A DNA stretch of 64,000 bases from IMG/VR virus record IMGVR_UViG_3300017917_003143, positions 248,001 to 312,000 of that record, one strand, 5' to 3'. Of the stretch, positions 1 to 34,331 are shown in pieces (positions within the stretch are counted from its first letter, which is position 1; every line of letters starts with the position of its first letter). Made by a program: the position numbers and the translations under genes. Under the pieces are notes generated by a model. That model did not search any database, had not been told where the DNA came from, and saw only the letters and a list, made by a program, of their open reading frames with translations.

Positions 1-3000
1 AAATACATTGGTTGCTACCACAGTTCCTGTGCCATAGTCGTAACTACCGGGGTCTCCAGTGACATCGCCTTCATCAAATGGAGTGTCATCATAGGGTTCG
101 CCCACTATGGTACCAGTTTCAGTTGGCCCCACAAACACTTGGGTCAACAATCCTTGTTCTCTGGTGTCATTCCAAGTTGTAACAGCTATGGCTGCTCCAG
201 TGGCAGCACCAACTCGGAGTATTAGTTGATCTCCGTTGACGATATAATCAGCATCAGTAGAAAGAGCGATAACGATTTGTGCTCCGACTTCAGGAGGAGT
301 AAAGAACTCTACATATAGATCACTGCTACCGTCCCAGGTGCTGATGACATAGTCGACGTTTTGTACTGCTAATTCCTGATCGATATAAACTTTGACATCG
401 GTAGGAGAAACTAGTCCGCCTGAAACTTTTCCTCTGGTTGGGAGGTAGTATGGTCCCATGGTGCTACCGTCACCAAAATATTCCACACTTTCTGATGGGC
501 GCAATCTCTGCCCATCACGCTCTACTATGAGGTTGATTTCATTGGTGCCTTGGAGACTGTTGCTCAAAGTGTAAGTGGTTGTGCTGCCATCGTAGATAAA
601 GTATTGTGTTTGAGGGAAGCTCCAACTGCTTGGAGGCACAGTGGCACCTAATACAGTGATCACTACCCAGTCAGTGGCATCGTATGTGTCATCAAACGTG
701 ATCAGTGTTTCATACCCATTGACTGGAGCATAGGTATAATTGGTAATAATTTCACCGTTGACCAGGATCAATATTTCATCCAATACGCTTTCAGAATCTA
801 CTAGAGTGTAGAATATGAAATTGAAAGATGATCCGCTGTTGATAGTTTGATTGACACGATACACTTCGTTGTTGTATCGTACGTAGGTACCTCTGGAATA
901 CACAGTAAATGTTGACCAATTAACAGCAGTGATCACAGGAATAGTCAAGCTGTTGCCAACAAACTGTCCAGGATAGCTTTCTTTGTATAGCTGGCTGCCG
1001 CCGCCGATACCGTATACTTGTAAGTCAATCACGTCACCGTTGGCTGCGCCTGCGATCACTGTGACTGTGCGAGCGGCCCAGTCAACTGTGTATTCTTCTT
1101 CAGGTATCAATGAAACTCTGTTGGTAACGTTGATCACACGCACTGCCACAGCATGGCGCATGACGTTGGCAAAACTCACGGTATTGTCTACTGTGGTATA
1201 TTCAAGATTGATTGATTTAATGTTAAATCCGTGCCCATTGCCTTCCCAATCCGCGCCTGGACGGGTATAAACACGCAGATCTAATGTATCAAATGTAGAT
1301 CCAGGAATCAGTTCTTCTGGAGCATGACTCGAGAAGGTATCAATAAATGCGCCACCGTCGACGTTGATGTCTGTGGCACGTGTGCCCAAGTACGGATCCA
1401 AGAAACTGCTTTCATAGATCGCATCAAGGATAGCAGGATCATAGGTTGGGCGGCCTTCTGGTCCATAGCTAATGTTGTCGTACGGGTTGATGTCAAAATT
1501 ACCCACATCATAACCAGTGTTCTGGCTAAACAGCGGGCCTGCTACTTGTACGCCAGGATAGTCTATCCCCAACATCACTTGTTGTAGTTCTCGACCGGGC
1601 TCGTTAGGACTTGGGGTGTAAAGTCCTATCACTCGATCTGCGGCGTCAAGAGTGGCTTGATCCACTTCGGTGTACTGGGTAGGATCAAATATAGGACCGC
1701 TGTCCAGTTCAGCACTGTCATCCACTGCGTTGACACTGTAAACTTGATTTTGGAAACGAACCAACTGTCCTTCAAGATACTTGGTGTTGGGTTCCCAGTC
1801 AACGACTTGACTGTTATAATTGTAACGATCGTATTTGATCGTTGTCAGGAAGTTTCTTACTAACTCATTGCCCAGCACAGGTACAGCGCGAGCACCAAGG
1901 CCATTGCCGCCGCTGATAGTAACTGTTGGTGTTACAGTATACCCAGATCCTGTTTCAACAACGATAACTTCAACCAACTGTCCAGCTGTGTTGACTCTTG
2001 CCACAGCAAAAGCTGTTGATCCTGCATAGGCCAAGGTAGCAGTACCGTTGGTCTGGACTCCACTGGTAAATGTAGGAGGCTTGTCTCCTGTGGTTCCACC
2101 ATCCTGGATAGTATAGAGATTGCCAAGATAAAATACCTGTTGATCAGTGGCGTAGGCTGTGTTAGGTTGCCATTCATTACCAATGGTAACCACCGGAGGG
2201 ACAGTATAACCAGCACCGGGTTCTATGACATCAACACCTTGTAATACCAGGGTGTAGTTTTGATACCACTGGTTCCATGGTATTTCTTGCCAGATCGCCG
2301 CTGTTGATGGTTCACTGTTGCTGTACTTGGGCGGTTGTGTGTCATCAAGAGCAGGAGCCTCAAATCCTTGTATGCCGGAATCATAGTATGCTGGGCAATC
2401 AAAGTCGGTTACTGTACCTTCGTAGGTATCTAAACCATAGTATTTGAGATTGAACTCTTTGATCTTGACGTGATATGGCTTGACTTCTTTGATGTAGTCC
2501 AATACGAAATCTTGATTGTCCTGGCGGAAAATCTGATATGGTAACAACTCTCGGATTCTGTGATCAACATCGATCAATGAAGTCTTGAACAACCAATCAG
2601 GTGCATTGAATTCTGTCAGGATAAATTCAAACACCAACATCAATAGTTCATTACGGAAGATTTGTAATTCACCTGTCAGCAACTCTTCGTTGATGGCTTT
2701 TATTATCTGTCTTGTCTCAATGGCAGGATATTGATCAAAGTATTGGCTGTCAAAAGTTTCTACGTCAAACCCAAACTTTCCTGCGTTGTAATCCCAAACA
2801 GTATTGAGTATACGGATTGTGCCATCTTCAAGCACCACACGTATCCATTCTCCACCAAGATACTGATAAATTTCAAACTTACCAAAACTGTTGCGAGTGA
2901 CCTTGGCGCTGGCGCCCTCAGGCACTGTGAGTCTGGACAAATCGTTAAACGTGGCCACTTCTGCTACTGGTTTGATGCTGGCATTGTAACCGGGTTGTAT

Positions 3001-6000
3001 CCAATCAATGTATTCCCAATATTTCTTGGTATCGTAGTTTTGTACGCGACTTAGCAATAGATATTTAGAGATTCCGTCAATGGTAGGTGTCACTGTGTAG
3101 ATCGCCCATAAACCATTTTGTGTCTCATCAGACACTACCAAGTATTTGTATCCAAATGGTACTTCTCCAAGATCTTGGAATGTCAGCTCAGTGTATGTTG
3201 CCACCCTCTTGTTCCATTCGCCGGATGCTGATGTTGGCTCTGGCTCTTCGCTGTTGAGCAAATTGAATGGTCGGCTATCACTGATAGGAAACTGCGCTAG
3301 TATAGCGTTGGCACGCTCAAGATAGTTCTGTAGGGCCAAGAATCTGTCAGCAAAGAAACTCTGACGTGGACGGAATTGTACTCCGTATAGTTCTGCTGGA
3401 CTTAATTTTGGATCTGGAACTTTATTGCCTAAGGTATCTTCACCGCAGAATGAGTCCAGCATCTTGCGATACAGTCCTGCTCCAAGGAATCCTTCAGGAT
3501 TGCCAGCTGGAATAAGATCGTATTCAACGTGGACATTGTCATCGTTGGCTATCTTGTCAAATTCAACGTGCAGGATAGTGTCTTGTGCAGATATGAATTG
3601 ACGTGCATTGTACAAGGCCAGTGTGCCCGATGCCAGTGCGGCAATGTATGGAATACCTGAACTACGAGGATTCTCGATGTATTGTGCTACTGCTTCGGCG
3701 CTGAGTGTTTTCTTGGCGCGGGTAACGACTTCGCGAATGCCTTTGACCCAATAGAAATACCTTGTGGCAAATAAGCCATCATTGTTGAGCTTGCTGGCAA
3801 CAACATAACTGGTAGTGCTATAAACAGTTCCAGGGCCATCATACTGAGCTGGTGGAACATCACTTTCAATCCACTGATATACATCTACTGTGCTACCTGG
3901 GAACAATTGGCCCCAACGACGGCTTGCATACTCAATGCTACCTTGATGATAGTCTATGAATCTTACAGTAGATAGATCCCACCACATCTTGCCAAGATAT
4001 GTTTCGTTCCAAGTGTCTCCAAAATTGTTTACTTCACCAACGTTGTAGTTGGCTGGGTCTAATGCCCCAAGATAGTCAATGTTCTGGCGAGCTGATCCAA
4101 GGATCTTGCCTTGCAATGGATCAATGAAATCAAAATATTGTGTTACCTTTGATTCTAATTTGTCGTAAGAGAACACAGAGTTGATCAACTTGACATCTAC
4201 TATCGGTGTTTCTCTATAGATTGGGTTCCAAGCGGCCAGTCTATCTACGTTGTTTAACTGTGATATGCGACCATAGTCGCCAATGCTGTCACCAAGATCA
4301 TCCTGTGGAGATCCTACCAACAGTATACCGTTGAAATAGCTGACTGCTGTACCAAATTCATCCAAGGATTGCAGGGTTTCATCGTAGATCTGCTGACCAA
4401 ACACAAACTTGCTTGGATTTCTAATAGATCCGTTGGCCGATGACAACAAGTCATATGTGTACACCACGCCGCTTTCGCTCAATGGGTCAAAGAACTCTGT
4501 GGCTTTGCTGTCAAAATATGTGGCACCATTGTCGAATGTTGTTGGCTTGGCTGCTGTTCCTTGAGGAGAGCCCACTACCAGTGTGCGCGAATCATCGCTG
4601 ATGGCCACTGATTCTCCAAAGTGCGCATAAGCGATTTGATTTGGAGCTTCAACTGTTTGTGTGTAATGCATTGGCTCAAGGCCAAGATCTGAAAACGCAG
4701 TTCCAACACCTGGTGATACCAACAATTGGCTGAAAGGTATGGCAGCATTTGAATTAGCGATGCTGATGGTTAGATAACCGTTGCTCACTGATGCACTGAC
4801 ATTGGGTATCAAGACTAGACCTGCTGTAGGTCCTGATGGTACAGGAGTAGCGGCCACATTGATGTCATTGGCATAGAGTTCTACCCAACTTGACTGCTGC
4901 CAGTAGGTAGTGTTATCTATGCTGACTGAAACTGGAACGCTTCTGATAGAACGATAAATCGTGACTCCATCAATTACAAATGTGTTAGCACTCCATCCGA
5001 TAGAACTGTTCCATGGTGTAGGTGTTGACACTGAAATATCAACGTTGTTGATTCTCACTGTGTCGCCAGGTGTCAGTGTAGGATCCTGTTCAACACCGGT
5101 TATGATACCGTATAAACGATTTTGATTTACAAAACGTTCTACACTGCCAGCCTCTGGAAGAACTGCGGAATCGTTAGGTTGTCCAATGTACAGACTGCAA
5201 TTTGTAGGGCACTGATCAACTGCTTTACCAAAAGTTGCGCCGGCTTGTGGTGCATTGGAAGCCACAGCTTGCATCAATTGGAACTCATTGGTTTCAATCT
5301 CAATAGTATCGCCCACATTCAATGGATAGTCAATGGTCACTGTGTTTGCATTGTCCTCTACGAACTGTCCATTGTTGTTGAGCCCATCTGGAATCAAGAA
5401 TGTAGCATTGACTTTGACTGTAGCTGGACCGTTGAAATTTCTCAAGGTACTGTAAGTTGTGGTAGATGGATTGGTTACCGTGAATCTTTCTACACAACGA
5501 TCAAATACATAGACCTGGCCAGCTAATAATTTTCCACCCACAGTATCGTTGGGAGCACCAATCACTATCTGTCGGCCATCAGTGGTAGTAGTTATTGAAT
5601 GACCAAATCTTGCATTGGTTGGCAATCCTGGTACTGGCAAATAATCAACGTATTGCCAGTATGATATACTGGTCACAAGAATTGTTCCAAACACCCCTTG
5701 CAAGAAAGTTATATCCTGTGTCAATGGATTGAATGTATAATCCATGTTGGGACGTTGTAATATGTCATTGACATACACGCTGAAACTGTAGATGTCTGTT
5801 GCAGTATAGAGTTCTTCAATATTAAACACTGTGGTTGGCGTATTTGGGAAGAACGTTTTGCTCTGTAAACGTATGATACGTATTTCGTCGCCAGTGTTAG
5901 GCGGGGTATCAAATACGACGTTTTCACCATCATATGTCCAGTCCACGTTGGCGGTCTTTGGCAAGTCGTTGACTGTGACACCAATCTGCTGGCTACCAAT

Positions 6001-25851: not shown

Positions 25852-26868
25852 ATGGCCAACTTATTCAAGAAGGCTATCGTTTTCACTGACATCCACTTTG
25901 GACTGAAATCGAATAGCCTATTACACAATCAGGATTGCGAGAAGTTTGTAGATTGGATCATTGCCACAGCCAAGGAGCAAGGTTGCGAAACCGGTATGTT
26001 CCTAGGCGATTGGCATCATCATCGTGCGGCAATCAATCTACAAACACTAAACTTTAGTTTGCAGGCTCTGGAAAAACTATCCCGAGCCTTTTCGCAGTTT
26101 TTCTTCATACCCGGAAATCACGATCTCTACTACAGAGACAAGCGTGACATCCACGGTGCAGCCTGGGCCAAGCACTTGCCCAACATCCACATCTGCAATG
26201 ACTGGTTTGAAGAAGGTGATGTCATCATCGCTCCTTGGTTAGTAGGCGATGATCACAAGCGTATCCAAAAAATGTCCAGCAAGTACATGTTTGGACACTT
26301 TGAACTGCCACACTTCAAGATGAATGCCATGGTAGAAATGCCAGACCACGGTGAGATACAGGCCGCACACTTTGGACACTATGACAAGGTGTTCTCTGGG
26401 CATTTCCACCTGCGGCAACACAAAAACAACATCAACTACATCGGCAATGCGTTTCCGCACAACTTTGCCGACGCAGGAGATGACAAGCGCGGCTGTATGA
26501 TTCTTGAGTGGGGAGCAGAGCCCGAGTATCATGCCTGGCCCGAACAACCTCTTTACAATGTTTTCGATCTTTCTACTTTGATCGATCATGGAGATCAGCT
26601 GTTGAAACCCAACATGCATGTGCGTGTACAGCTGGACATTGAGATATCATACGAAGAAGCCACATTCATCAAAGATACATTTATCGCCAAACACAGTCTC
26701 AGAGAAATGGCGCTGATTCCAAACAAGAGATCTGCCTTGGAAGAAGACATGGCGCCAGGCGAAATACGTTTTGAATCTGTAGATCAGATTGTTACTGATC
26801 AGATCACCAAGATTGAATCCGAGTTTTACGATCCCAAATTGTTGTTACAAATCTATCAGGCTCTATGA
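25852..26868 (+). CDS. gp47: Recombination endonuclease subunit (Mre11/SbcD-like)
   Basis: Metallophosphoesterase motifs FTDIHFG, LGDWHH, PGNHD, GHFE and SGHFH; adjacent to gp46. Confidence 0.93.
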   Translation: MANLFKKAIVFTDIHFGLKSNSLLHNQDCEKFVDWIIATAKEQGCETGMFLGDWHHHRAAINLQTLNFSLQALEKLSRAFSQFFFIPGNHDLYYRDKRDIHGAAWAKHLPNIHICNDWFEEGDVIIAPWLVGDDHKRIQKMSSKYMFGHFELPHFKMNAMVEMPDHGEIQAAHFGHYDKVFSGHFHLRQHKNNINYIGNAFPHNFADAGDDKRGCMILEWGAEPEYHAWPEQPLYNVFDLSTLIDHGDQLLKPNMHVRVQLDIEISYEEATFIKDTFIAKHSLREMALIPNKRSALEEDMAPGEIRFESVDQIVTDQITKIESEFYDPKLLLQIYQAL

Positions 26869-28628
26869 TACAAATAAAAGACTTGACCGTTAAAAACTTT
26901 ATGAGTGTGGGCAATGCCACACAAGCCATCAACTTTGATCGTAGAGACCTCACGCTGGTCCTGGGCGAAAACCTTGACCTGGGTGGTGACGGTAGTAGGA
27001 ATGGCACGGGTAAAACTACTATTATCAATGCCTTGAGCTATGCCCTGTATGGGCAGGCCCTGACCAACATCCGTCGAGACAATCTCATCAACAAGACCAA
27101 TGGCAAAGCTATGCTGGTTTCTTTGGATTTCAACATCAACGGCAAGGACTACAGGATCGAGCGAGGGCGTAAACCCAATGTGCTAAAGTTCTATGTCAAC
27201 AATGAAGAACAAGCCGCAGATGACAACAGCCAGGGCGACAGTCGTGAAACACAGGATGCCATCGAGTCTGCGCTGGGTATGAGTCACGACATGTTCAAAC
27301 ATGTGCTGGCCTTGAACACATACACAGAACCTTTCTTGAGTTTGAAAGCTAATGATCAACGAGCCATAATTGAACAGCTCTTAGGCATCACTTTGCTTTC
27401 AGAACGTGCTGAACGCATCAAGGAACTCAACAGAGAAACCAAAGATGCCATCACGCAAGAAGAGATGCGTATCCGAGCTGTACAAGAAGCCAACAAACGC
27501 ATAGAGGAGCAGATTGAAAATCTCAAGAGGCGCCAAACACTATGGATTTCCAAGCAAACGGAAGACGTTGAAAAACTTGAAAAAGCCATTGAAGATCTCA
27601 AGGCGATTGATATTGAAGCGGAAATACAGGCGCACCGCGATCATGCCACGTGGGACCAAAAAAGGAAAGACTTCAACGACTTACAGAGTGCGCTTTCCCG
27701 TGCTAAACTCGAGCGTGATCGCGAAGATAAAACCATTAAAAAGGTTGCATCAGAGATTACGTCACTTGAAAACCATACCTGCCATACGTGCGGTCAAGCG
27801 TTCCACGACCATAAGCACCAACAAGTGTTGGAAAAAAAGCAGAAGGAGTTGGCAGATGCTCGAGAGGCAAGCCAGCAACATAGCACCACAGTATCAGACT
27901 TGGAGACTGCCATCGCCTCCCTGGGCGAGATAGGTAAGCCGCCCAAAATGTTCTATGATCAAGAAAGCGATGCCATAGAACATCGTGCCAACTTGGCTGC
28001 TTTGGAAAAGCAGTTGGAAAGCAAAAAAATTGAAACCGATCCCTATGGTGAGCAGATCGAAGAAATGTCTGGACAAGCCTTGCAAACAGTGAGTTATGAC
28101 ACACTCAACGAACTCACACGTCTGCAAGAGCATCAGGACTTTTTGCTCAAGCTACTCACCAACAAAGATTCGTTTATTCGTAAGAAAATCATCGAACAGA
28201 ATCTTAGCTATCTGAACTCAAGACTCACACACTATCTTGACAGGATCGGATTGCCTCATCAGGTTATCTTCCAAAACGATCTTACTGTGGAGATCACTGA
28301 ACTGGGTCGAGATCTTGATTTTGATAATCTGAGCAGAGGTGAACGCAATCGTTTGATACTAAGTATGTCGTGGGCTTTTAGAGATGTCTGGGAGAGCCTA
28401 TATCATCCAATCAACGTGCTGTTCATTGACGAGCTTGTGGATTCTGGTATGGATACACAGGGCGTTGAAAACTCCTTGGCATTGCTTAAGAAAATGAGTC
28501 GTGAACGACACAAGAGCATTTGGCTGGTAAGTCATAGAGACGAGCTGGCTGGACGAGTAGAAAACATACTCAAAGTTGTGAAAGAAAACGGGTTTACCAG
28601 TTATAACACAGATGTAGAAATTTCATGA
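26865..28628 (+). CDS. gp46: Recombination ATPase subunit (Rad50/SbcC-like)
   Basis: Walker A GSRNGTGKTT, coiled coil with a CHTC zinc hook, signature LSRGE and Walker B LFIDE. Confidence 0.93.
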   Translation: MIQIKDLTVKNFMSVGNATQAINFDRRDLTLVLGENLDLGGDGSRNGTGKTTIINALSYALYGQALTNIRRDNLINKTNGKAMLVSLDFNINGKDYRIERGRKPNVLKFYVNNEEQAADDNSQGDSRETQDAIESALGMSHDMFKHVLALNTYTEPFLSLKANDQRAIIEQLLGITLLSERAERIKELNRETKDAITQEEMRIRAVQEANKRIEEQIENLKRRQTLWISKQTEDVEKLEKAIEDLKAIDIEAEIQAHRDHATWDQKRKDFNDLQSALSRAKLERDREDKTIKKVASEITSLENHTCHTCGQAFHDHKHQQVLEKKQKELADAREASQQHSTTVSDLETAIASLGEIGKPPKMFYDQESDAIEHRANLAALEKQLESKKIETDPYGEQIEEMSGQALQTVSYDTLNELTRLQEHQDFLLKLLTNKDSFIRKKIIEQNLSYLNSRLTHYLDRIGLPHQVIFQNDLTVEITELGRDLDFDNLSRGERNRLILSMSWAFRDVWESLYHPINVLFIDELVDSGMDTQGVENSLALLKKMSRERHKSIWLVSHRDELAGRVENILKVVKENGFTSYNTDVEIS

Positions 28629-28658
28629 TCACGAGCAGAATATGATAAACAATAGCTC

Positions 28659-29093
28659 ATGTCATGGCTTTTCGAATCTCAAGAAATTACGGAACTACCC
28701 GAAGATTGCGTTGGTTTTGTTTATTTGATCACTAATAAACTGACCGGCAGGAAATATATTGGCAAAAAACTTGCAAAATTTAAGCGAACAACATACAAAG
28801 TAGTCAAACTCAAAAACGGCAACAAGAAACGCAAAAAAATTCGTGGCAAAATAGATTCAGATTGGCAAACATATTATGGCAGTTCTCCGGAGTTATCTCG
28901 AGATGTTGAACTGTTAGGCTCACAAAACTTCTCACGCGAAATCTTATACTACTGTAGGTCCAAGGCTGAATGTAGCTATATCGAAGCTCGCGAACAATTT
29001 TCCCGACGTGTATTAGAATCAGATGATTACTACAACGGGCACATACAAGTGCGTGTACATGGTAGTCATATCAAAGGCAAGATCGCTCAGTAA
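28659..29093 (+). CDS. Stand-alone GIY-YIG nuclease-domain protein (Seg-like family) with a basic insertion
   Basis: GFVYLITNKLTGRKYIG motif, a later Glu (YIEARE) and Asn (YYNG); 144 aa with no separate C-terminal DNA-binding domain. Confidence 0.8.
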   Translation: MSWLFESQEITELPEDCVGFVYLITNKLTGRKYIGKKLAKFKRTTYKVVKLKNGNKKRKKIRGKIDSDWQTYYGSSPELSRDVELLGSQNFSREILYYCRSKAECSYIEAREQFSRRVLESDDYYNGHIQVRVHGSHIKGKIAQ

Positions 29094-29460
29094 AGACTCG
29101 CACAGGTCAATATCGTGTGCCGAACAGTAGAAACCTGGACCCAAGGTCGCAGGGATCCGAAGCCTCGTCGCTGAAACGAGCACTCAATCAGTATCCTTGA
29201 CAGGACCACGATCGCAAATGCCTGCGGTTTGATTGTTTGAATAGAATATAAAGGGAAAAAGACGTAGCAGTGATGCTACACGTCAACATAATATGTTAGC
29301 GTATGTTATGTTGGCCGCCGTTGTGATAAAGACACAGCTCGAGGTACCGGACAACCGCCTCTGTAATGCTGTAACGCTAAGTGACTGTTCGTACTCGGAT
29401 GATGACACCTCTTTGCCCTGTGCGGGCAAAGTGTGACCATAGTATCTGGATGATAACTGT
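29094..29460 (+). ncRNA. Candidate large structured non-coding RNA (strand inferred, family unknown)
   Basis: Part of a 447-nt gap between convergent genes. About ten hairpins visible by eye, including a three-way junction and a GNRA-capped stem; no U-tracts; no credible ORF. Confidence 0.55.
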
Positions 29461-29531
29461 TTCGCTTCGCTCATCTCTTAATAATACATTCATGAGCGAC
29501 AGCGAAATGAATAGAACTTCGTAGAAGTTCT
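29461..29531. other. Cluster of inverted repeats with GNA/GNNA DNA mini-hairpin motifs; possible origin or ssDNA signal
   Basis: TTCGCTTCGCTCAT (29461-74) pairs with ATGAGCGACAGCGAA (29492-506). GCGAAGC on the minus strand (29464-70), GCGACAGC on the plus strand (29496-503), AGAACTTC-GTA-GAAGTTCT (29513-31). Confidence 0.4.
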
Positions 29532-29540
29532 CAAAGTGTG

Positions 29541-29876
29541 TTATAGATTAGTATCTGGCCAATCACGGAACAGTGCGTGTTGTATATCGCCAGCAACGAA
29601 CTGATTGAATGACTTGTGTTTCTGTTCGAGTTCTCCTTCGAGTGGAGCAACACGACGGAATGCCTGATCCATTTGGCCCATGTTCCGGAACTCCATGAGT
29701 ATCATCCATTCTGGCATGTCAGCTATACTACGGAAGCCCATCTTGCAACGAGTAATCCTGTAGCTTTCCATCTTGCCCTCAGAAACTAAGTGATCAAAGA
29801 AGCTTTTCATGCCCGTGACCCAGTCTATGTCGCTGATGTCACCTTCTTTGTTGGCCCATATAGTGTAAATGTCCAT
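29541..29876 (-). CDS. Small alpha/beta-barrel-like protein, DUF6614-like
   Basis: 111 aa; the pattern FFDHLVSEGKMESYRITRCKMGF...ILMEFRNMGQMDQAF resembles DUF6614 (from recall); TAATG overlap with the upstream gene. Confidence 0.5.
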   Translation of the reverse strand: MDIYTIWANKEGDISDIDWVTGMKSFFDHLVSEGKMESYRITRCKMGFRSIADMPEWMILMEFRNMGQMDQAFRRVAPLEGELEQKHKSFNQFVAGDIQHALFRDWPDTNL

Positions 29877-30316
29877 TATGTCATCGGTCCTAAAATTTCA
29901 AATCCATCTATCTCTTTCTTGTAGAGATGTGCTTGCTCGAGATAGAGATAGTCAAACCCCCGGGCTTTGTAGATAGCACACTCTGTTTTCATTGTTTCAA
30001 TGCCCAGTCTTGCTCGAGGATCGTGATAGGTCCAAGCAAATTGGGCACATTCGGCATTGCGATCATCATAGCGTTTGATCAAGCTGAATGCTACCATGCG
30101 TCCTTGGTCAAAATATCCAATCACATCAGTCATTGGATCAGTGTAGCGACTACGGAACATAGGCATCACACTTGCAAAGTGTTTGTAGATGCAATAAGTC
30201 CTGTAGATCTCGTCCAGCTCGACCATCTGCTCTTCAGTGGGTATGAGGTATCCCCATTCCACTGTTGGCTCGTAATTGGTTTTTGCCAAGTTAATCCTTG
30301 CAAATTGATAGCTCAC
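29876..30316 (-). CDS. ATE_C/Bpt-like aminoacyl-tRNA-protein transferase domain protein (GNAT/FemABX fold)
   Basis: IYRTYCIYKH, GRMVAFS, RLG, GFDYLYL and YK..E.L align by eye to the bacterial Bpt C-domain consensus LYxxYxxxRH...GKLVAV...SLG...GLPYLYLG...YK. Confidence 0.6.
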   Translation of the reverse strand: MSYQFARINLAKTNYEPTVEWGYLIPTEEQMVELDEIYRTYCIYKHFASVMPMFRSRYTDPMTDVIGYFDQGRMVAFSLIKRYDDRNAECAQFAWTYHDPRARLGIETMKTECAIYKARGFDYLYLEQAHLYKKEIDGFEILGPMT

Positions 30317-30819
30317 TGGCGCGGATCCTTTCTGTGATTAAACAACACCTTTAGATAGTTTTCGGGCCAGGAGTCATAGAATCCTTGGCGTGCCATGAGC
30401 CGGGCTTTTTGATCCAAGTCACTGACACTTTGTACCAATGCTATAGCGTATGTTCCTTGATTCATAGGAACACCGTTGACTATTTCAGGATCTTGCGGGT
30501 GGTCTTCAAGCACTATGAGATCTTTGGCTAGCAAAAATTCTGTGTTGGCATACTCTAATGCTTGATGGAAATCTTCATAATTCCAGTGATCGGCATCGTA
30601 CACCAGCATCACCACTTTTTTGTCACCCAGGCCACTCAGCGCCAGTTGCATAAGATCCAGTATTGGATTGATGCCTATCTGTATCCTGTACTCGTTGTTG
30701 ATCCTGGCTTGCCGTGCATATGGGCAAGGTGGCCAGCCGCCCAGAGCAGGGTGTGGAACTTCAACAAAGCCCACGATCCATGATTCTATATCTTGGCGGA
30801 CACGATCAATATCTAACAT
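30313..30819 (-). CDS. DUF1415-like protein
   Basis: IESWIVGFVE...PCPYARQA and LEDHP resemble the DUF1415 W...CPFA and FHP motifs; TAATG-coupled to the gp51-like gene. Confidence 0.55.
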   Translation of the reverse strand: MLDIDRVRQDIESWIVGFVEVPHPALGGWPPCPYARQARINNEYRIQIGINPILDLMQLALSGLGDKKVVMLVYDADHWNYEDFHQALEYANTEFLLAKDLIVLEDHPQDPEIVNGVPMNQGTYAIALVQSVSDLDQKARLMARQGFYDSWPENYLKVLFNHRKDPRQ

Positions 30820-31934: not shown

Positions 31935-34331
31935 ATGGCAGATTTAGAAAATTCCAGCGAACTGTTGCGACAATCCTTAGATGAATTGCGCAAAACCGGC
32001 ATGCTCACTGCCAGCACGTTGGACAAGCTAAATGCAGCCGCTAAAAAAAGCACCAAAGATGTCAAGGATCTTGGAGAAACTACCAAAGAAACTGCCGGTG
32101 ACGTTGACGACTTTGGAAAGACACTGACCAAAGTCACTCGTGCGCTGATTGATTCTACAGGTGCTATAAGAGAAAACAGAGAAGATTTCCGCAGTCTCAA
32201 CCCGGCTATCAGAGCATCAGGTATAGCAGTAGGTGCGGCTGGTCGCAAGTTTGGAGATGCGATCAGTGGTGTTGGTGATGCCATCTCTGGCCTTAGTTTA
32301 TTTTTGGGCCCCAAAGGCAAACTGATTGGTATCCTGGGCGGTGGCTTATTGTCCGGCCTAGGCAAAGCAGTAGGAGCCAGTTCGGATGCGGCCGCACAAT
32401 TGGCCGTGCAGTTTGGAGAATTTGCCACAGGTGAATTACAAAATGTAGTCAATGCATATCGTCAAGTGGGAGCAGTGGGCGCGATATCTGCCGGTGGAAT
32501 GACACAGCTCTATGATCAAGCCATTGCTGCCGGACTGAGCATTGGACAGTTCAGCAAAATCATAGCTGAAAACAGCGAGACACTGGCCAAAGCAACTGGT
32601 AGCACTGCCGAAGGTGCCAAGGTGTTGGCACAAATCGCCAATGTCGGTGACGCCACACAAAAACAATTTTTAGCTCTAGGCATATCAGTTGAACAGACTA
32701 GAGAGTTCCAAGCCAAATTCCTAGAACAAAATCGAGTCACTGGTCGTATCGCCATCGGCGATACCAAAGCACTGACAGAAGCCAGCAAAGCATACATTTT
32801 CCAACTGGATGAGTTGGCCCGAATCACAGGATTGAGTAGAGAACAAGCTCAAAAATTATACGACGAACAAAATAGAAACATAAGATTCCGTGCCAGTGTG
32901 CGCATGGCCGAACGAGAATTTGGACCAGCCGCGGCACAAGCCATGAGAGATTCTGTGGCTGTGATCAGTACTGTGAACAAGCAGTTTGGTCAAGGTTTCG
33001 CTGACCTTATGGGTCCTGGTGGCGCCTCAACAGAAGCCGCTAAGAACCTGCAGATAGCTACAGGTAATGCTGCCAAAGGCATCGCTGACATGGTGCGCAC
33101 CGGACAGATCACTGCGGATCAAGGTGCGGCTATGATCCGTCAAGCCATTAGAAACAAGATGGAAGGCCTGGGCGGAGACACATATTTGGGTCTGGTAGGC
33201 GGTGTTGAAGGGCCAATGAAGGATCTGCTGTTGGGCATGGATGACATAGCCATAGCCAACAATCTCAACGTTGAAGAGATGAAAAAGGCTCGTCAAGGTA
33301 GCATAGATGCCAGAAAAGCTGAAGATAAAAATACTCAACAGGTCATTGATGCACAGTTAGCACTGCAAAAAATGGCAGTGGAACTTGACAAGATAGTCAG
33401 AGATAAAATATTACCTCATGCAGCCACGGCTGTTAAAACATTCACAGAAACATTGTTGTCGTCGGTCGACTACATCAATGAAAAATTAGGTATTAAACCT
33501 GCTGGAGGTGGTGGTGCAGGCGGAGGTGGTGGAGGTGGCGGCCCAGCAGGTCGCGGAACCGGAACAACACAAGCACCTGCCACAGGTATAGGCGGTGCTG
33601 GTGCACCAACACCTGAAGCCGCCGGAACGTTGGGCGCAATTAGAACACTGATTGGAAAAGCAGAAAGCGGAGGCAACTATAACATATTGGTTGGCGGTAA
33701 AAAGGCCGATTTAACAAATATGACGTTGGCAGAAGTTTACGACTTGCAGAAAAAAATGATGCAACGTGGCAGTGGATTTGAAAGCACTGCGGTGGGCAAG
33801 TATCAAATGCTGTATGGCACACTAAGGAGTACAGCAAACAAACTTGGACTCGATCCAGCCACTACCAAGTTTGACCAAGCTACCCAAGATAGATTAGCAG
33901 ACGAACTGATCGTCAGCAATGCCGGTTATAACAAATATTCATCAGGTGCTATCAGCAAAGAACGATTCCTTTACAATCTTTCTGCTATCTGGGCAGGCTT
34001 ACCAAAAGATGCCAGCGGTGTCAGCTATCACAAAGGAGTGGGTTCTAACAAAGCCACTGTGGGCTGGGAAGAAGCCATGGGCAGTTTTGCCTATGGTGGC
34101 ATCAGCTCAGGACCAAAGTCGGGTTACATGAGCATGTTGCACGGCACCGAAGCAGTGATTCCACTGCCAGGCGGTCGCAGTATTCCTGTGGAAATGAACG
34201 GGGTTACAGACAAGATTGGCGAACAAGTCACTATGATGAGTGCCCAGTTAGATCGATTAGATGAAATGGTTAGTTTGATGAAAACCAACAACGACGTCAA
34301 CACAAAGATACTTCGCGCCCAGCAAAGTTAG
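31935..34331 (+). CDS. Tape-measure-like protein with a C-terminal lysozyme (lambda-lysozyme/GH104-like) domain
   Basis: Ala/Gly-rich helical N-terminal about 520 aa, a poly-Gly linker, then KAESGGNYN...STAVGKYQMLYGTL...FDQATQDRLA. Confidence 0.7.
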   Translation: MADLENSSELLRQSLDELRKTGMLTASTLDKLNAAAKKSTKDVKDLGETTKETAGDVDDFGKTLTKVTRALIDSTGAIRENREDFRSLNPAIRASGIAVGAAGRKFGDAISGVGDAISGLSLFLGPKGKLIGILGGGLLSGLGKAVGASSDAAAQLAVQFGEFATGELQNVVNAYRQVGAVGAISAGGMTQLYDQAIAAGLSIGQFSKIIAENSETLAKATGSTAEGAKVLAQIANVGDATQKQFLALGISVEQTREFQAKFLEQNRVTGRIAIGDTKALTEASKAYIFQLDELARITGLSREQAQKLYDEQNRNIRFRASVRMAEREFGPAAAQAMRDSVAVISTVNKQFGQGFADLMGPGGASTEAAKNLQIATGNAAKGIADMVRTGQITADQGAAMIRQAIRNKMEGLGGDTYLGLVGGVEGPMKDLLLGMDDIAIANNLNVEEMKKARQGSIDARKAEDKNTQQVIDAQLALQKMAVELDKIVRDKILPHAATAVKTFTETLLSSVDYINEKLGIKPAGGGGAGGGGGGGGPAGRGTGTTQAPATGIGGAGAPTPEAAGTLGAIRTLIGKAESGGNYNILVGGKKADLTNMTLAEVYDLQKKMMQRGSGFESTAVGKYQMLYGTLRSTANKLGLDPATTKFDQATQDRLADELIVSNAGYNKYSSGAISKERFLYNLSAIWAGLPKDASGVSYHKGVGSNKATVGWEEAMGSFAYGGISSGPKSGYMSMLHGTEAVIPLPGGRSIPVEMNGVTDKIGEQVTMMSAQLDRLDEMVSLMKTNNDVNTKILRAQQS

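What the first reader, a model, noticed from the sequence alone, without database searches (positions are those of the whole stretch)
28659..29531. Catalytic-domain-only GIY-YIG protein next to the structured RNA: candidate RNA-partnered nuclease or origin-activating module
Seen: the 144-aa protein has the GFVY...YIG motif and later Glu/Asn residues but ends right after the nuclease fold. It carries a very basic insertion (KFKRTTYKVVKLKNGNKKRKKIRGK), and the structured element starts immediately after its TAA. Established: homing GIY-YIG enzymes such as I-TevI and the Seg family get specificity from extra C-terminal DNA-binding domains, which are absent here. Inference: the basic hairpin could bind the adjacent RNA, which would supply specificity (a ribonucleoprotein analogous in logic to OMEGA/HEARO but with GIY-YIG). 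Alternatively the protein nicks or processes an R-loop at an origin, next to the gp46/47 recombination nuclease. I recall this protein family being common in T4-like phages, so the gene linkage is what needs testing.
Basis: inference. Interest (0 to 1): 0.75.

Follow-up and report, generated by a model that had tools for sequence, protein, structure and literature searches.

The report
Small nuclease gene with large RNA
An uncultured freshwater T4-like giant phage carries a one-domain GIY-YIG nuclease gene followed at once by a roughly 440-base intricately folded RNA. The pairing is real and conserved and was partly noted in 2010, but what the RNA does, and whether it binds the nuclease, is still unknown.

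Summary
ORF 28659-29093 is a catalytic-domain-only GIY-YIG protein (Pfam PF19835, intact active site, confident model closest to I-TevI). A conserved structured RNA starts 1 nt after its stop codon (29095).

The first 144 nt are Rfam RF01718 (Polynucleobacter-1, 92 bits). The conserved RNA runs to about 29533 (about 440 nt). A hand-built structure of 101 pairs, three of its helices pseudoknot or long-range pairings, has 90% of cells paired against 35-42% in slid controls.

The linkage is strong both ways. 74 of 76 assessable close homologues carry the RNA downstream, and 88 of 94 RNAs have the GIY-YIG gene upstream. Weinberg et al. (2010) had already noted the same gene family next to this motif.

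The gene is not a roaming homing endonuclease: it is single-copy and sits downstream of gp47/gp46.

New here:
- Two RNA classes share one 3' domain.
- A PD-(D/E)XK nuclease gene sits next to the RNA instead of the GIY-YIG gene in some phages (10 of 12 of its relatives).
- Two direct-repeat words have the same 7-nt core in 69 of 69 RNAs.

No guide-like match, antisense target or DNA site was found. The basic hairpin does not track the RNA. RNA-protein binding remains an inference.

The parts
25852..26868 (+). gp47 (SbcD/Mre11-like nuclease subunit), first gene of the co-directional block
   Evidence: phrog_100, E 1.3e-60
26865..28628 (+). gp46 (SbcC/Rad50-like subunit). It is the conserved upstream neighbour of the module in nearly all related loci.
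   Evidence: phrog_77, E 9e-102. gp46 lies immediately upstream in 41 loci and further upstream in 29 more of the 80 related loci; 10 show none within the flank held.
28659..29093 (+). Catalytic-domain-only GIY-YIG nuclease, 144 aa, single copy in the 343.6-kb genome
   Evidence: PF19835, E 1.2e-33. phrog_447, whose label 'NAD synthetase' looks like a misannotation. AF2 pLDDT 96.6. I-TevI catalytic domain Z 8.9. One PF19835 match in the genome.
28776..28856 (+). Coding region of the basic beta-hairpin insertion (residues about 40-66)
   Evidence: Strands E40-50 and E56-66 in the model. The hairpin is 6-11 residues longer than in Melnitz, phiN3, ACP17 and S-SSM7. Short-hairpin proteins also occur with the RNA.
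29095..29238 (+). 5' domain of the RNA, equal to the Rfam Polynucleobacter-1 motif (RF01718). It holds PK1, P1, P2, P3 and the P4-P6 three-way part.
   Evidence: cmscan 92.2 bits, E 7.5e-20, model positions 1-141 of 141. Covariation.
29239..29533 (+). 3' continuation of the same conserved RNA, not covered by the Rfam model. It holds hairpins P7 and P8, the long-range pairing 29296-29301 with 29375-29380, the pseudoknot 29320-29324 with 29351-29355, and helices P9 to P13.
   Evidence: Conservation profile, mutual-information pairs, pair counts.
29311..29533 (+). 3' domain shared by all RNA classes: class A, class B, and the RNAs next to PD-(D/E)XK genes
   Evidence: nhmmer profile hit 29311-29533, E 3e-55. 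The same profile finds 74 of 80 protein-first loci and 9 of 12 PD-(D/E)XK loci.
29345..29359 (+). Near-invariant hairpin loop TACCGGACAACCGCC. Its ACAAC pairs with GTTGT at 29320-29324.
   Evidence: Columns are 92-94% identical. The pseudoknot covaries: UA/CG, GC/AU and UA/GC/AU.
29392..29404 (+). Twin word, copy 1 (tACTCGGATGATG), preceded by GTGAC
   Evidence: Identity covariation with copy 2.
29443..29455 (+). Twin word, copy 2 (tATCTGGATGATA), preceded by GTGAC
   Evidence: The 7-nt variable core is identical to copy 1 in 69 of 69 non-identical RNAs, with 10 distinct cores. Permutation gives a mean of 11.6 and a maximum of 21.
29488..29531 (+). 3' terminal elements: the P12 stem with a GAGC-GNNA-GCGAA hairpin, and the terminal hairpin P13 with loop GUA (consensus CGUAG, counting the closing C-G)
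   Evidence: P13 is 98.4% paired, with 7 of 8 pairs carrying compensatory changes. P12 pairs come from the mutual-information list.
29541..29876 (-). Convergent DUF6614 gene. It marks the end of the module and is not part of it.
   Evidence: PF20319, E 4.9e-22.

Best explanation
This is a vertically inherited two-part module of uncultured freshwater T4-like phages. The window comes from a 343.6-kb virus record.

SHOWN:
- The protein part is a single-copy, catalytic-domain-only GIY-YIG nuclease with an intact active site.
- It lies downstream of the Mre11/Rad50-like genes gp47 and gp46.
- On the same strand, starting at or within a few bases of its stop codon, follows a roughly 440-nt pseudoknotted RNA.
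- The first third of that RNA is the Rfam Polynucleobacter-1 motif.
- The last half is a domain shared with a second RNA class.

INFERRED:
- The RNA is made as the tail of the nuclease transcript. There is no promoter-like site between ORF and RNA, and the two abut.
- The RNA works together with the small nuclease encoded next to it, as a ribonucleoprotein.
- Its two identical, co-varying words would be twin docking sites for two copies of one partner, most simply a nuclease dimer.
- The RNA would give a nuclease that lacks its own DNA-binding domain a scaffold, a control or a substrate choice, within the gp46/47 DNA-end-processing or DNA-breakdown pathway.

It is not a homing endonuclease cassette, and on present evidence it is not a programmable guide-RNA system.
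For: Identity of the parts.

RNA extent and structure: (90% of cells paired against 35-42%; 76 of 101 pairs compensatory).

Linkage:
- Protein-first, 74 of 80 close homologues carry the RNA downstream on the same strand. Four of the six without it are cut by a contig end.
- RNA-first, of 94 assessable RNAs, 88 have the GIY-YIG gene within 3 kb upstream on the same strand, 4 have a PD-(D/E)XK gene within 3 kb, and 2 have neither.
- The RNA starts -6 to +48 nt from the stop codon in 53 of 56 class-A loci.
- There is no sigma-70-like promoter between ORF and RNA.

Not a mobile homing gene:
- One copy in the genome.
- gp46 is found upstream in 70 of the 80 loci.
- Protein identity of 70-95% is no lower than that of gp46 in the same loci, 54-96%.

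A second, unrelated small nuclease at the same place: PF24608 PDDEXK_15 (E 1e-26) is followed by the RNA in 10 of 12 of its own relatives.

A twin partner is suggested by the identical variable cores in 69 of 69 RNAs across 10 different words. The same holds in class B, in the PD-(D/E)XK-linked RNAs and in the Polynucleobacter chromosomal copy.

The gene-RNA association was reported independently by Weinberg et al. 2010 (PMC2864571).
Against: - No binding evidence of any kind exists. Complex prediction did not fold the job.
- Protein-RNA mutual information gave no outstanding pair; the maximum corrected value was 0.31.
- The twin words do not sort by nuclease family. L336 and L337 are PD-(D/E)XK-linked yet use the GIY-type word ACTCAGATGAAG.
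- In about a tenth of loci one or two unrelated ORFs, one of them methyltransferase-like, lie between the nuclease gene and the RNA.
- L330-L333 carry both nucleases in one block, with the RNA last. Linkage could therefore reflect position at the end of an operon rather than partnership.
- The protein family works without this RNA in hundreds of cultured phages.
- Expression evidence is weak. It consists of metatranscriptome contigs from relatives at word depth 2-5, which cannot be told from DNA carry-over.
Confidence: 0.4

Rival explanations
1. The RNA is an independent noncoding RNA gene with its own function, unrelated to the nuclease. It would merely keep an ancestral position at the 3' end of the gp47-gp46-nuclease gene block. 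The twin words would then bind some other phage or host factor.
For: - Unrelated ORFs are inserted between the nuclease gene and the RNA in about 10% of loci.
- The RNA stays last when both nucleases are present, as in L330-L333.
- Two RNAs have no nuclease within reach: L096 and L182.
- The twin words do not track the nuclease family.
- No protein-RNA covariation was detected.
- Weinberg's alignment includes a copy from the Polynucleobacter chromosome (NC_009379) among the RF01718 examples, and his text says 'most', not all, lie downstream of the gene family.
Against: - The adjacency is very tight, with the RNA starting at or overlapping the stop codon in most loci.
- The linkage holds at 94-97% both ways, over lineages whose gp46 has diverged to 54% identity.
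- Where the GIY-YIG gene is missing, the neighbour is another small nuclease rather than a random gene.
Confidence: 0.3
2. The RNA is a cis-acting 3' untranslated element of the nuclease mRNA. It could protect the transcript from 3' exonucleases, insulate convergent transcription units, or couple translation termination to folding so as to limit production of a dangerous nuclease.
For: - It lies on the same strand, abuts or overlaps the stop codon, and has no promoter-like site in between.
- In the window it sits between convergent genes.
- The terminal hairpin P13 reads as terminator-like on the minus strand.
Against: - About 440 nt with three pseudoknot or long-range helices, a near-invariant 15-nt loop and twin co-varying words is far more than known 3' stabilisers need.
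- The RNA remains when other ORFs separate it from the nuclease gene.
- Downstream genes are not always convergent. In L088 a same-strand ATG follows the RNA.
- The twin words are not complementary to the nuclease translation start: -3.71 against -3.75 kcal/mol for permuted partners.
Confidence: 0.15
3. It is a programmable RNA-guided DNA nuclease, as the first reader proposed (OMEGA/HEARO logic with a GIY-YIG cutter). A variable RNA segment would pair with target DNA.
For: - The nuclease lacks a targeting domain.
- There is a large adjacent RNA with a variable, AU-rich, largely unpaired stretch at 29456-29490.
- The twin identical words could address the two strands of a symmetric site. This is inference only.
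Against: - No RNA word of 13 nt or more recurs in the 343.6-kb genome above chance: 2 seen against 4.4 expected at k=13, and 0 against 1.1 at k=14.
- The twin words are short and come in few types, 10 in 69 RNAs. This is not hypervariable as guides are.
- The locus sits in fixed synteny, so nothing suggests a transposon.
- The protein family acts without this RNA in cultured phages.
- A 144-aa GIY-YIG domain has no known RNA-DNA duplex recognition. This last point rests on general knowledge.
Confidence: 0.07
4. It is a free-standing homing endonuclease gene that has settled beside a conserved RNA gene, which it targets in phages lacking the endonuclease. T4 segB among tRNA genes would be the model.
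For: - The catalytic domain is closest to I-TevI (Z 8.9), and the Pfam family is named after SegE.
- Two unrelated nuclease families occur next to the same RNA, as expected if different homing genes invade one conserved site.
Against: - There is no DNA-binding domain.
- The gene is single copy.
- It is present in 94-97% of loci, so nuclease-free RNA alleles are almost absent.
- It sits in fixed synteny and is at least as well conserved as gp46.
- It is a one-place-per-record gene in 550 cultured phages.
Confidence: 0.05
5. It is an origin-activating element. The RNA would form or mark an R-loop, which the nuclease nicks next to the recombination nuclease gp46/47.
For: Only the position next to gp46/47 and the lack of another assigned function.
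Against: - Selection acts on RNA secondary and tertiary pairing. The compensatory changes keep the fold, not the sequence. That is not what a DNA-RNA hybrid primer needs.
- No repeats, iterons or word enrichment occur in the flanking DNA.
Confidence: 0.03

Closest known systems
Polynucleobacter-1 RNA motif (Rfam RF01718; Weinberg et al. 2010, Genome Biol 11:R31)
   Same: Window 29095-29238 is a full-length member at 92 bits. As described in that paper's supplement, it lies downstream of the gene family GOS11034/PSSM2_218. That family is shown here to be this GIY-YIG family: 42% identity and PF19835 E 5.6e-54. It comes from fresh water, as the original examples did.
   Different: - The Rfam model covers only 141 positions, while the conserved RNA is about 440 nt. 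Weinberg's raw alignment already carries a partial 'tail' with a pseudoknot.
- The original paper found no example in purified phages. Here all the examples I fetched are in IMG/VR phage contigs, including records of about 345 kb.
- The function is still unknown.
I-TevI and Seg-type GIY-YIG homing endonucleases
   Same: The catalytic fold and motif residues are shared. I-TevI catalytic domain: Z 8.9, rmsd 2.6 over 84 residues. Pfam SegE_GIY-YIG.
   Different: This protein has no linker and no DNA-binding domain. It is single copy, sits in fixed synteny and is conserved like a core gene. It also carries a 25-residue basic beta-hairpin inserted in the fold.
T4 endonuclease II (DenA)
   Same: From general knowledge, not tested here: DenA is a domain-only GIY-YIG enzyme of about 136 aa in a T4-type phage. 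It acts upstream of the gp46/47 exonuclease in host DNA breakdown, and its gene sits next to nrdB. In Melnitz the homologue lies shortly downstream of a ribonucleotide-reductase gene, and in L055 the upstream ORF looked NrdB-like to me by eye, without a family search.
   Different: No sequence match to any PDB chain at E up to 10. EndoII was not among the structural matches returned. No RNA partner is known for DenA.
OMEGA systems (IscB/TnpB with omega-RNA; HEARO RNA)
   Same: A compact nuclease gene is adjacent to a large structured RNA on the same strand.
   Different: The nuclease fold differs: GIY-YIG or PD-(D/E)XK rather than RuvC/HNH. The locus sits in fixed synteny rather than a mobile-element context. 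No hypervariable guide and no target match were found. RNA dependence is unproven.
Type III toxin-antitoxin systems (ToxIN-like)
   Same: A nuclease and a structured RNA are encoded together. RNA repeats binding several protein copies is a possible logic for keeping a nuclease in check.
   Different: In ToxIN-like systems the antitoxin is a tandem array of short repeats upstream of an endoribonuclease gene. Here a single 440-nt RNA lies downstream of a DNA-nuclease-type gene. The two words sit inside one fold.
cow-rumen-2 RNA motif (Rfam RF02947)
   Same: There is a weak match to 29282-29383: a hairpin with a UUAGC loop, then GCCGCC, then a nested hairpin.
   Different: The score is 21.9 bits against a gathering score of 66, E 0.51. 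It is a lead only, and no relationship is shown.

Membership tests
Rfam RF01718 Polynucleobacter-1 RNA | Covariance-model score at or above the curated gathering score, over the full model | tested here: met
   92.2 bits against 37, model positions 1-141 of 141, E 7.5e-20. The search of the whole genome gave one hit, at the same place.
Rfam RF01718 Polynucleobacter-1 RNA | Helices supported by compensatory changes in relatives | tested here: met
   14 of 33 pairs are compensatory in 14 sequences. Helices 1-8 of the full structure are 81-100% paired.
Rfam RF01718 Polynucleobacter-1 RNA | Located downstream of the GOS11034/PSSM2_218 gene family (Weinberg 2010 supplement) | tested here: met
   PSSM2_218 is 42% identical to the window protein and matches PF19835 at E 5.6e-54. 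88 of 94 RNAs have this gene upstream.
GIY-YIG nuclease superfamily (PF19835 SegE_GIY-YIG) | Profile match over the curated cut-off | tested here: met
   116.4 bits against 25, E 1.2e-33.
GIY-YIG nuclease superfamily (PF19835 SegE_GIY-YIG) | Motif and catalytic residues kept: the Tyr of GIY, the Tyr of YIG, a basic residue, Glu and Asn | tested here: met
   Y22, Y33, G35, K37, E109 and N126 are invariant and R93 is at least 90% conserved in 94 sequences.
GIY-YIG nuclease superfamily (PF19835 SegE_GIY-YIG) | GIY-YIG fold | tested here: met
   AF2 pLDDT 96.6. I-TevI catalytic domain Z 8.9 and 8.5, GIY-YIG restriction enzyme PD-T4-3 Z 7.4, with the next unrelated row at Z 4.2.
Free-standing homing endonuclease (Seg/Mob type) | C-terminal DNA-binding domain joined to the catalytic domain | tested here: not met
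   The protein has 144 aa, and the model fold takes up the whole chain.
Free-standing homing endonuclease (Seg/Mob type) | Sporadic presence and variable location among close relatives | tested here: not met
   The gene is single copy. gp46 is found upstream in 70 of the 80 loci. The gene is present beside 94% of RNAs.
OMEGA-type RNA-guided nuclease | A hypervariable guide segment next to a conserved scaffold, matching target DNA | tested here: inconclusive
   A variable stretch exists at 29456-29490. No match above chance was found in the phage's own genome. Host DNA is unknown and could not be searched.
OMEGA-type RNA-guided nuclease | RuvC and/or HNH nuclease (IscB/TnpB lineage) within a transposon | tested here: not met
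   The protein is GIY-YIG. The locus is syntenic, not mobile.
Group I intron with an internal GIY-YIG ORF | Group I core recognisable, and a host gene interrupted | tested here: not met
   No Intron_gpI match at E up to 1 in 28000-30500. gp46 is complete at 587 aa and the next gene is convergent.
Ribonucleoprotein of the nuclease with this RNA | Direct, specific binding | not testable with these tools
   Complex prediction returned NOT FOLDED for protein plus RNA. The covariation test was without signal.

The most novel reading that the evidence does not exclude
The roughly 440-nt RNA is the obligatory partner of small, domain-only DNA nucleases. The partner is GIY-YIG in most phages and PD-(D/E)XK in others. 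The RNA's two identical words would each dock one nuclease subunit. The RNA would then decide where or when the pair cuts, feeding the Mre11/Rad50-like gp46/47 machine. That would be a new kind of RNA-dependent DNA nuclease, unrelated to CRISPR or OMEGA, in which one RNA scaffold serves two unrelated catalytic folds.
Probability: 0.22. Interest if true: 0.9.

Novelty: new member of a known kind. Interest (0 to 1): 0.6.

Why it matters
Polynucleobacter-1 has been an orphan RNA motif since 2010. This work adds the following:
- It names the neighbouring gene as a nuclease.
- It shows that the conserved RNA is about three times the length of the Rfam model and folds with pseudoknots, as large functional RNAs do.
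- It places the RNA in abundant uncultured freshwater T4-like phages, next to the recombination nuclease gp46/47.
- It gives two concrete handles for experiments: the twin words that always change together, and the alternative PD-(D/E)XK neighbour.

If the RNA does control or aim a domain-only nuclease, that would be a new RNA-protein nuclease principle. If it does not, it is still a large structured phage RNA of unknown function that is worth solving.

Tried and rejected
- Complex prediction (two protein copies plus RNA 29311-29533) was counted but not folded. It gives no evidence either way.
- The pattern scan of genome contigs with GTACCGGNCAACCGCC returned chance hits in GC-rich genomes only. 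One weak exception was L237.
The Polynucleobacter chromosomal context could therefore not be fetched.
- A PDB sequence-profile search found nothing at E up to 10. Foldseek E-values were all above 0.04, and only the VIA re-alignment singled out I-TevI.
- Protein-RNA mutual information over 66 pairs gave no outstanding pair.
- The twin word as a DNA site is rejected. The locus's own word occurs 10 times in 470 kb of flanks, against 7.4 for other loci's words. There is no pattern in the genome, and the spacing varies from 47 to 60 nt.
- The twin word as antisense to the nuclease translation start is rejected.
- A self-targeting guide is rejected.
- Flank pairing around the twin words gives a modest hairpin for copy 1 (-2.69 against -2.02 kcal/mol) and none for copy 2.
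- Metatranscriptome contigs touch the ORF end and the RNA 5' part in two river or freshwater RNA libraries, at word depth 2-5. This is too thin to show transcription or transcript ends.
It was rerun without them.
- The RNAalifold consensus on 40 sequences missed the pseudoknots and mispaired 63-65 with 421-423 (alignment columns). I replaced it with a hand-built structure checked by pair counts.
Full report
**The observation.** The window is bases 248001-312000 of a 343,632-bp IMG/VR virus record estimated 99% complete. It matches Pfam PF19835 (SegE_GIY-YIG) at E 1.2e-33 over residues 3-129. It also matches phrog_447, whose label 'NAD synthetase' looks like a propagated misannotation.

In 94 diverse relatives Y22, Y33, G35, K37, Y72, S75, E109 and N126 never change, and R93 almost never does. 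An AlphaFold2 model built on that alignment has mean pLDDT 96.6. The basic stretch forms a long beta-hairpin, residues 40-66. Structural comparison singles out the I-TevI catalytic domain (Z 8.9 and 8.5). The GIY-YIG restriction enzyme PD-T4-3 comes next (Z 7.4), well above unrelated rows at Z 4.2 or less.

**The RNA.** One base after the TAA, positions 29095-29238 match Rfam RF01718 (Polynucleobacter-1) full length at 92.2 bits, against a gathering score of 37. Conservation among 48 non-identical relatives does not stop there but continues to about 29533. I aligned 40 full-length relatives. Guided by RNAalifold and a mutual-information scan of 70 sequences, I wrote a structure of 101 pairs.

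That structure has 13 hairpins and nested helices (P1-P13), plus three pseudoknot or long-range pairings:
- a 5' pseudoknot, 29095-97 with 29106-08;
- a long-range pairing of the P8 loop, 29296-29301 with 29375-29380;
- a pseudoknot of GTTGT (29320-24) with ACAAC (29351-55), the latter inside a near-invariant loop.

On the alignment 90.0% of cells are paired, against 35-42% when partners are slid by 1-3 columns. 76 pairs show compensatory changes against 29-42 in the slid controls, and none of 500 shuffles reaches the observed values. Only its first third is the Rfam motif. Weinberg's raw 2010 alignment already carries a partial 'tail' with a pseudoknot, so the extension is only partly new.

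**Linkage, starting from the protein.** The 80 closest IMG/VR loci are 70-95% identical in protein.
- 56 have the Polynucleobacter-1 domain on the same strand, downstream of the gene.
- 13 of the rest carry a different conserved 5' domain of roughly 190-250 nt with no Rfam match. It is joined to the same 3' domain.
- A profile of that 3' domain finds 74 of the 80 loci. Four of the six misses are cut by a contig end. Only L055 and L057 truly lack the RNA within 2-3 kb.

More distant homologues behave differently. The family is present, one place per record, in 550 GenBank phage records, mostly T4-like cyanophages. Melnitz, phiN3, ACP17 and S-SSM7 have no such RNA. blastn with either RNA class finds nothing credible in 50,697 phage records.

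**Linkage, starting from the RNA.** A 16-nt pattern from the invariant loop pulled 120 viral loci, of which 106 hold the real 3' domain. Of the 94 non-identical ones with enough upstream sequence, 88 have the GIY-YIG gene within 3 kb upstream on the same strand. Four have a PD-(D/E)XK gene within 3 kb instead, and two have neither. In 53 of 56 class-A loci the RNA begins between -6 and +48 nt from the stop codon. No promoter-like site lies between ORF and RNA in the window.

**Not a roaming homing gene.** gp47 (SbcD-like) and gp46 (SbcC-like) precede the gene in the window. gp46 lies immediately upstream in 41 of the 80 related loci. It lies further upstream, with accessory ORFs between, in 29 more. 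The GIY-YIG protein (70-95% identity) is at least as conserved as gp46 in the same loci (54-96%). The genome holds a single PF19835 copy.

**A second nuclease.** In L105 and L152 a 170-aa PD-(D/E)XK protein lies between gp46 and the RNA. It matches PF24608 PDDEXK_15 at E 1e-26 and phrog_244, 'Holliday junction resolvase'. In L091 it lies just after the RNA. Starting from that protein, 10 of 12 relatives (49-99% identity) are followed at once by the RNA: nine by the profile and L334 by eye. gp46 is upstream in 10. L330-L333 carry gp46, a distant GIY-YIG, an ORF, the PD-(D/E)XK gene and then the RNA. The window's genome has no PDDEXK_15. The four records whose RNA has no GIY-YIG gene upstream (L105, L152, L091, L096) show no PF19835 match, but they are only 3-26% complete.

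**Twin words.** The mutual-information scan gave an unexpected result. Positions 29392, 29397, 29401 and 29403 co-vary with 29443, 29448, 29452 and 29454. The co-variation is by identity, not by complementarity: GG|AA, GG|AA and TT|AA|GG. These positions lie in two direct repeats, tACTCGGATGATG and tATCTGGATGATA, each preceded by GTGAC.

In all 69 non-identical class-A RNAs the 7-nt variable core is the same in both copies, although 10 different cores occur. Permuting partners gives a mean of 11.6 matches and at most 21. The same holds with other words in three further settings:
- class B RNAs;
- PD-(D/E)XK-linked RNAs, for example CTCATGAAGAG and TCTATGAAGAG;
- the Polynucleobacter chromosomal copy in Weinberg's alignment, ACUCAGCGAAAG and AUCUAGCGAAAG.

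Two segments that must stay identical are most simply read as two sites for one partner present twice.

**Tests of what that partner might be.** All came out negative or silent:
- The word is not enriched in flanking DNA or in the genome, and its spacing varies from 47 to 60 nt. A DNA site is therefore unlikely.
- It is not complementary to the nuclease translation start.
- No other part of the RNA co-varies with it in a Watson-Crick way.
- No residue of the GIY-YIG protein stands out in covariation with it.
- The word type does not sort by nuclease family, since L336 and L337 use a GIY-type word.
- The complex predictor did not fold a protein-RNA job.

The basic hairpin is family-wide. It has a long and a short form. 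The short form occurs both with the RNA and without it, so it is not a marker of RNA binding. No RNA segment of 13 nt or more recurs in the phage genome above chance, which gives no sign of an OMEGA-like guide. Host DNA could not be searched. Nothing beyond the position next to gp46/47 supports an origin role. Selection clearly acts on the RNA fold.

**Expression.** Contigs from two river or freshwater RNA libraries, belonging to relatives, cover the end of the ORF and the 5' part of the RNA at word depth 2-5. One of them bridges the stop codon. This is compatible with co-transcription, but it cannot be told from DNA carry-over.

**Literature.** The only primary paper in the library naming the motif is Weinberg et al. 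2010. Its supplement says most examples lie downstream of family GOS11034, 'with possible homology to PSSM2_218', and that none was found in purified phages. PSSM2_218 is 42% identical to the window protein and is a PF19835 member at E 5.6e-54. The gene-RNA association is therefore published, without the nuclease identity. Searches for GIY-YIG together with structured or guide RNAs found nothing relevant.

**Reading.** What is shown is a conserved, vertically inherited pair: a small nuclease gene and a large, elaborately folded RNA, placed downstream of the Mre11/Rad50-like genes of uncultured freshwater T4-like phages. What is inferred is that the two act together. The case for partnership rests on four points:
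- the tightness and two-way strength of the linkage;
- the fact that the alternative neighbour is again a small nuclease;
- the twin words that call for a doubled partner;
- the nuclease's lack of any targeting domain.

The case against rests on five points:
- the intervening ORFs in a tenth of loci;
- the loci with both nucleases;
- the words not tracking the nuclease family;
- the family's RNA-free life in cultured phages;
- the absence of any binding evidence.

I put the partnership at about 0.4. An independent RNA kept by synteny gets 0.3, a cis-acting 3' element 0.15, and the guide, homing and origin ideas well below that.

**Novelty.** This instance is a new member of a described kind (RF01718 with its associated gene). 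The additions are the nuclease identity, the full extent and fold of the RNA, the two RNA classes, the PD-(D/E)XK alternative, the synteny with gp46/47 and the twin-word rule. Together they make an old orphan motif experimentally approachable.

Noticed in passing
L017, L019, L020, L026-L028, L040, L042, L047, L065, L073, L077, L079 (for example L027:3433-3850): A second RNA class. It has a 5' domain of roughly 190-250 nt beginning TTTGGTCGAGG, with no Rfam match. It is fused to the same 3' domain and lies downstream of the same GIY-YIG subfamily.
   Followed up: partly
L120, L124, L127, L140, L154 (around the GTACCGGGCAACCGCC match); also L125 and L150: Other viral contigs carry unrelated-looking hairpins that display the same loop, GTACCGGNCAACCGCC. 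One group has GTTGT just downstream. This may be a reusable tertiary module. There was no Rfam match.
   Followed up: partly
L237 (Cyclobacteriaceae MAG CP058703.1), 277-3601: There are four copies of the 16-nt loop pattern; the first three are spaced exactly 551 nt apart. Each gives only a weak hit to the 3'-domain profile (E about 5e-4). It is a tandem repeat of unknown nature.
   Followed up: no
window 29282-29383: Weak resemblance to the Rfam cow-rumen-2 motif (21.9 bits, E 0.51). Both have a hairpin with a UUAGC loop, then GCCGCC, then a nested hairpin. They may be distant relatives.
   Followed up: no
L330-L333, positions about 1940-2330 and 3001-3420: These loci carry both a distant GIY-YIG (42% identical to the S-SSM7 protein) and the PD-(D/E)XK nuclease in one block after gp46, with the RNA last.
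   Followed up: partly
window 28659-29093 and GenBank records: This GIY-YIG family is labelled 'NAD synthetase' in many GenBank and RefSeq phage records and in PHROGs (phrog_447). The label has no support from Pfam or from the fold.
   Followed up: yes
L007, L012, L015, L038, L066, L070, L050, L036 (alignment A4, columns about 313-361): An optional extra AU-rich hairpin of 30-45 nt is inserted between helices P10 and P9 in some RNAs. The window lacks it.
   Followed up: no
window 31935-34331: A 798-aa protein next to the baseplate-hub gene carries a run of glycines (GGGGAGGGGGGGGPAG). Its C-terminal part has only weak PHROG matches of unknown function.
   Followed up: no
window 29541-30819 (minus strand): Three convergent small genes follow the RNA: DUF6614, an ORF with a faint ATE_C-like hit, and a phrog_28122 protein. 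The DUF6614-like sequence recurs downstream of the RNA in many related loci, though not all.
   Followed up: no
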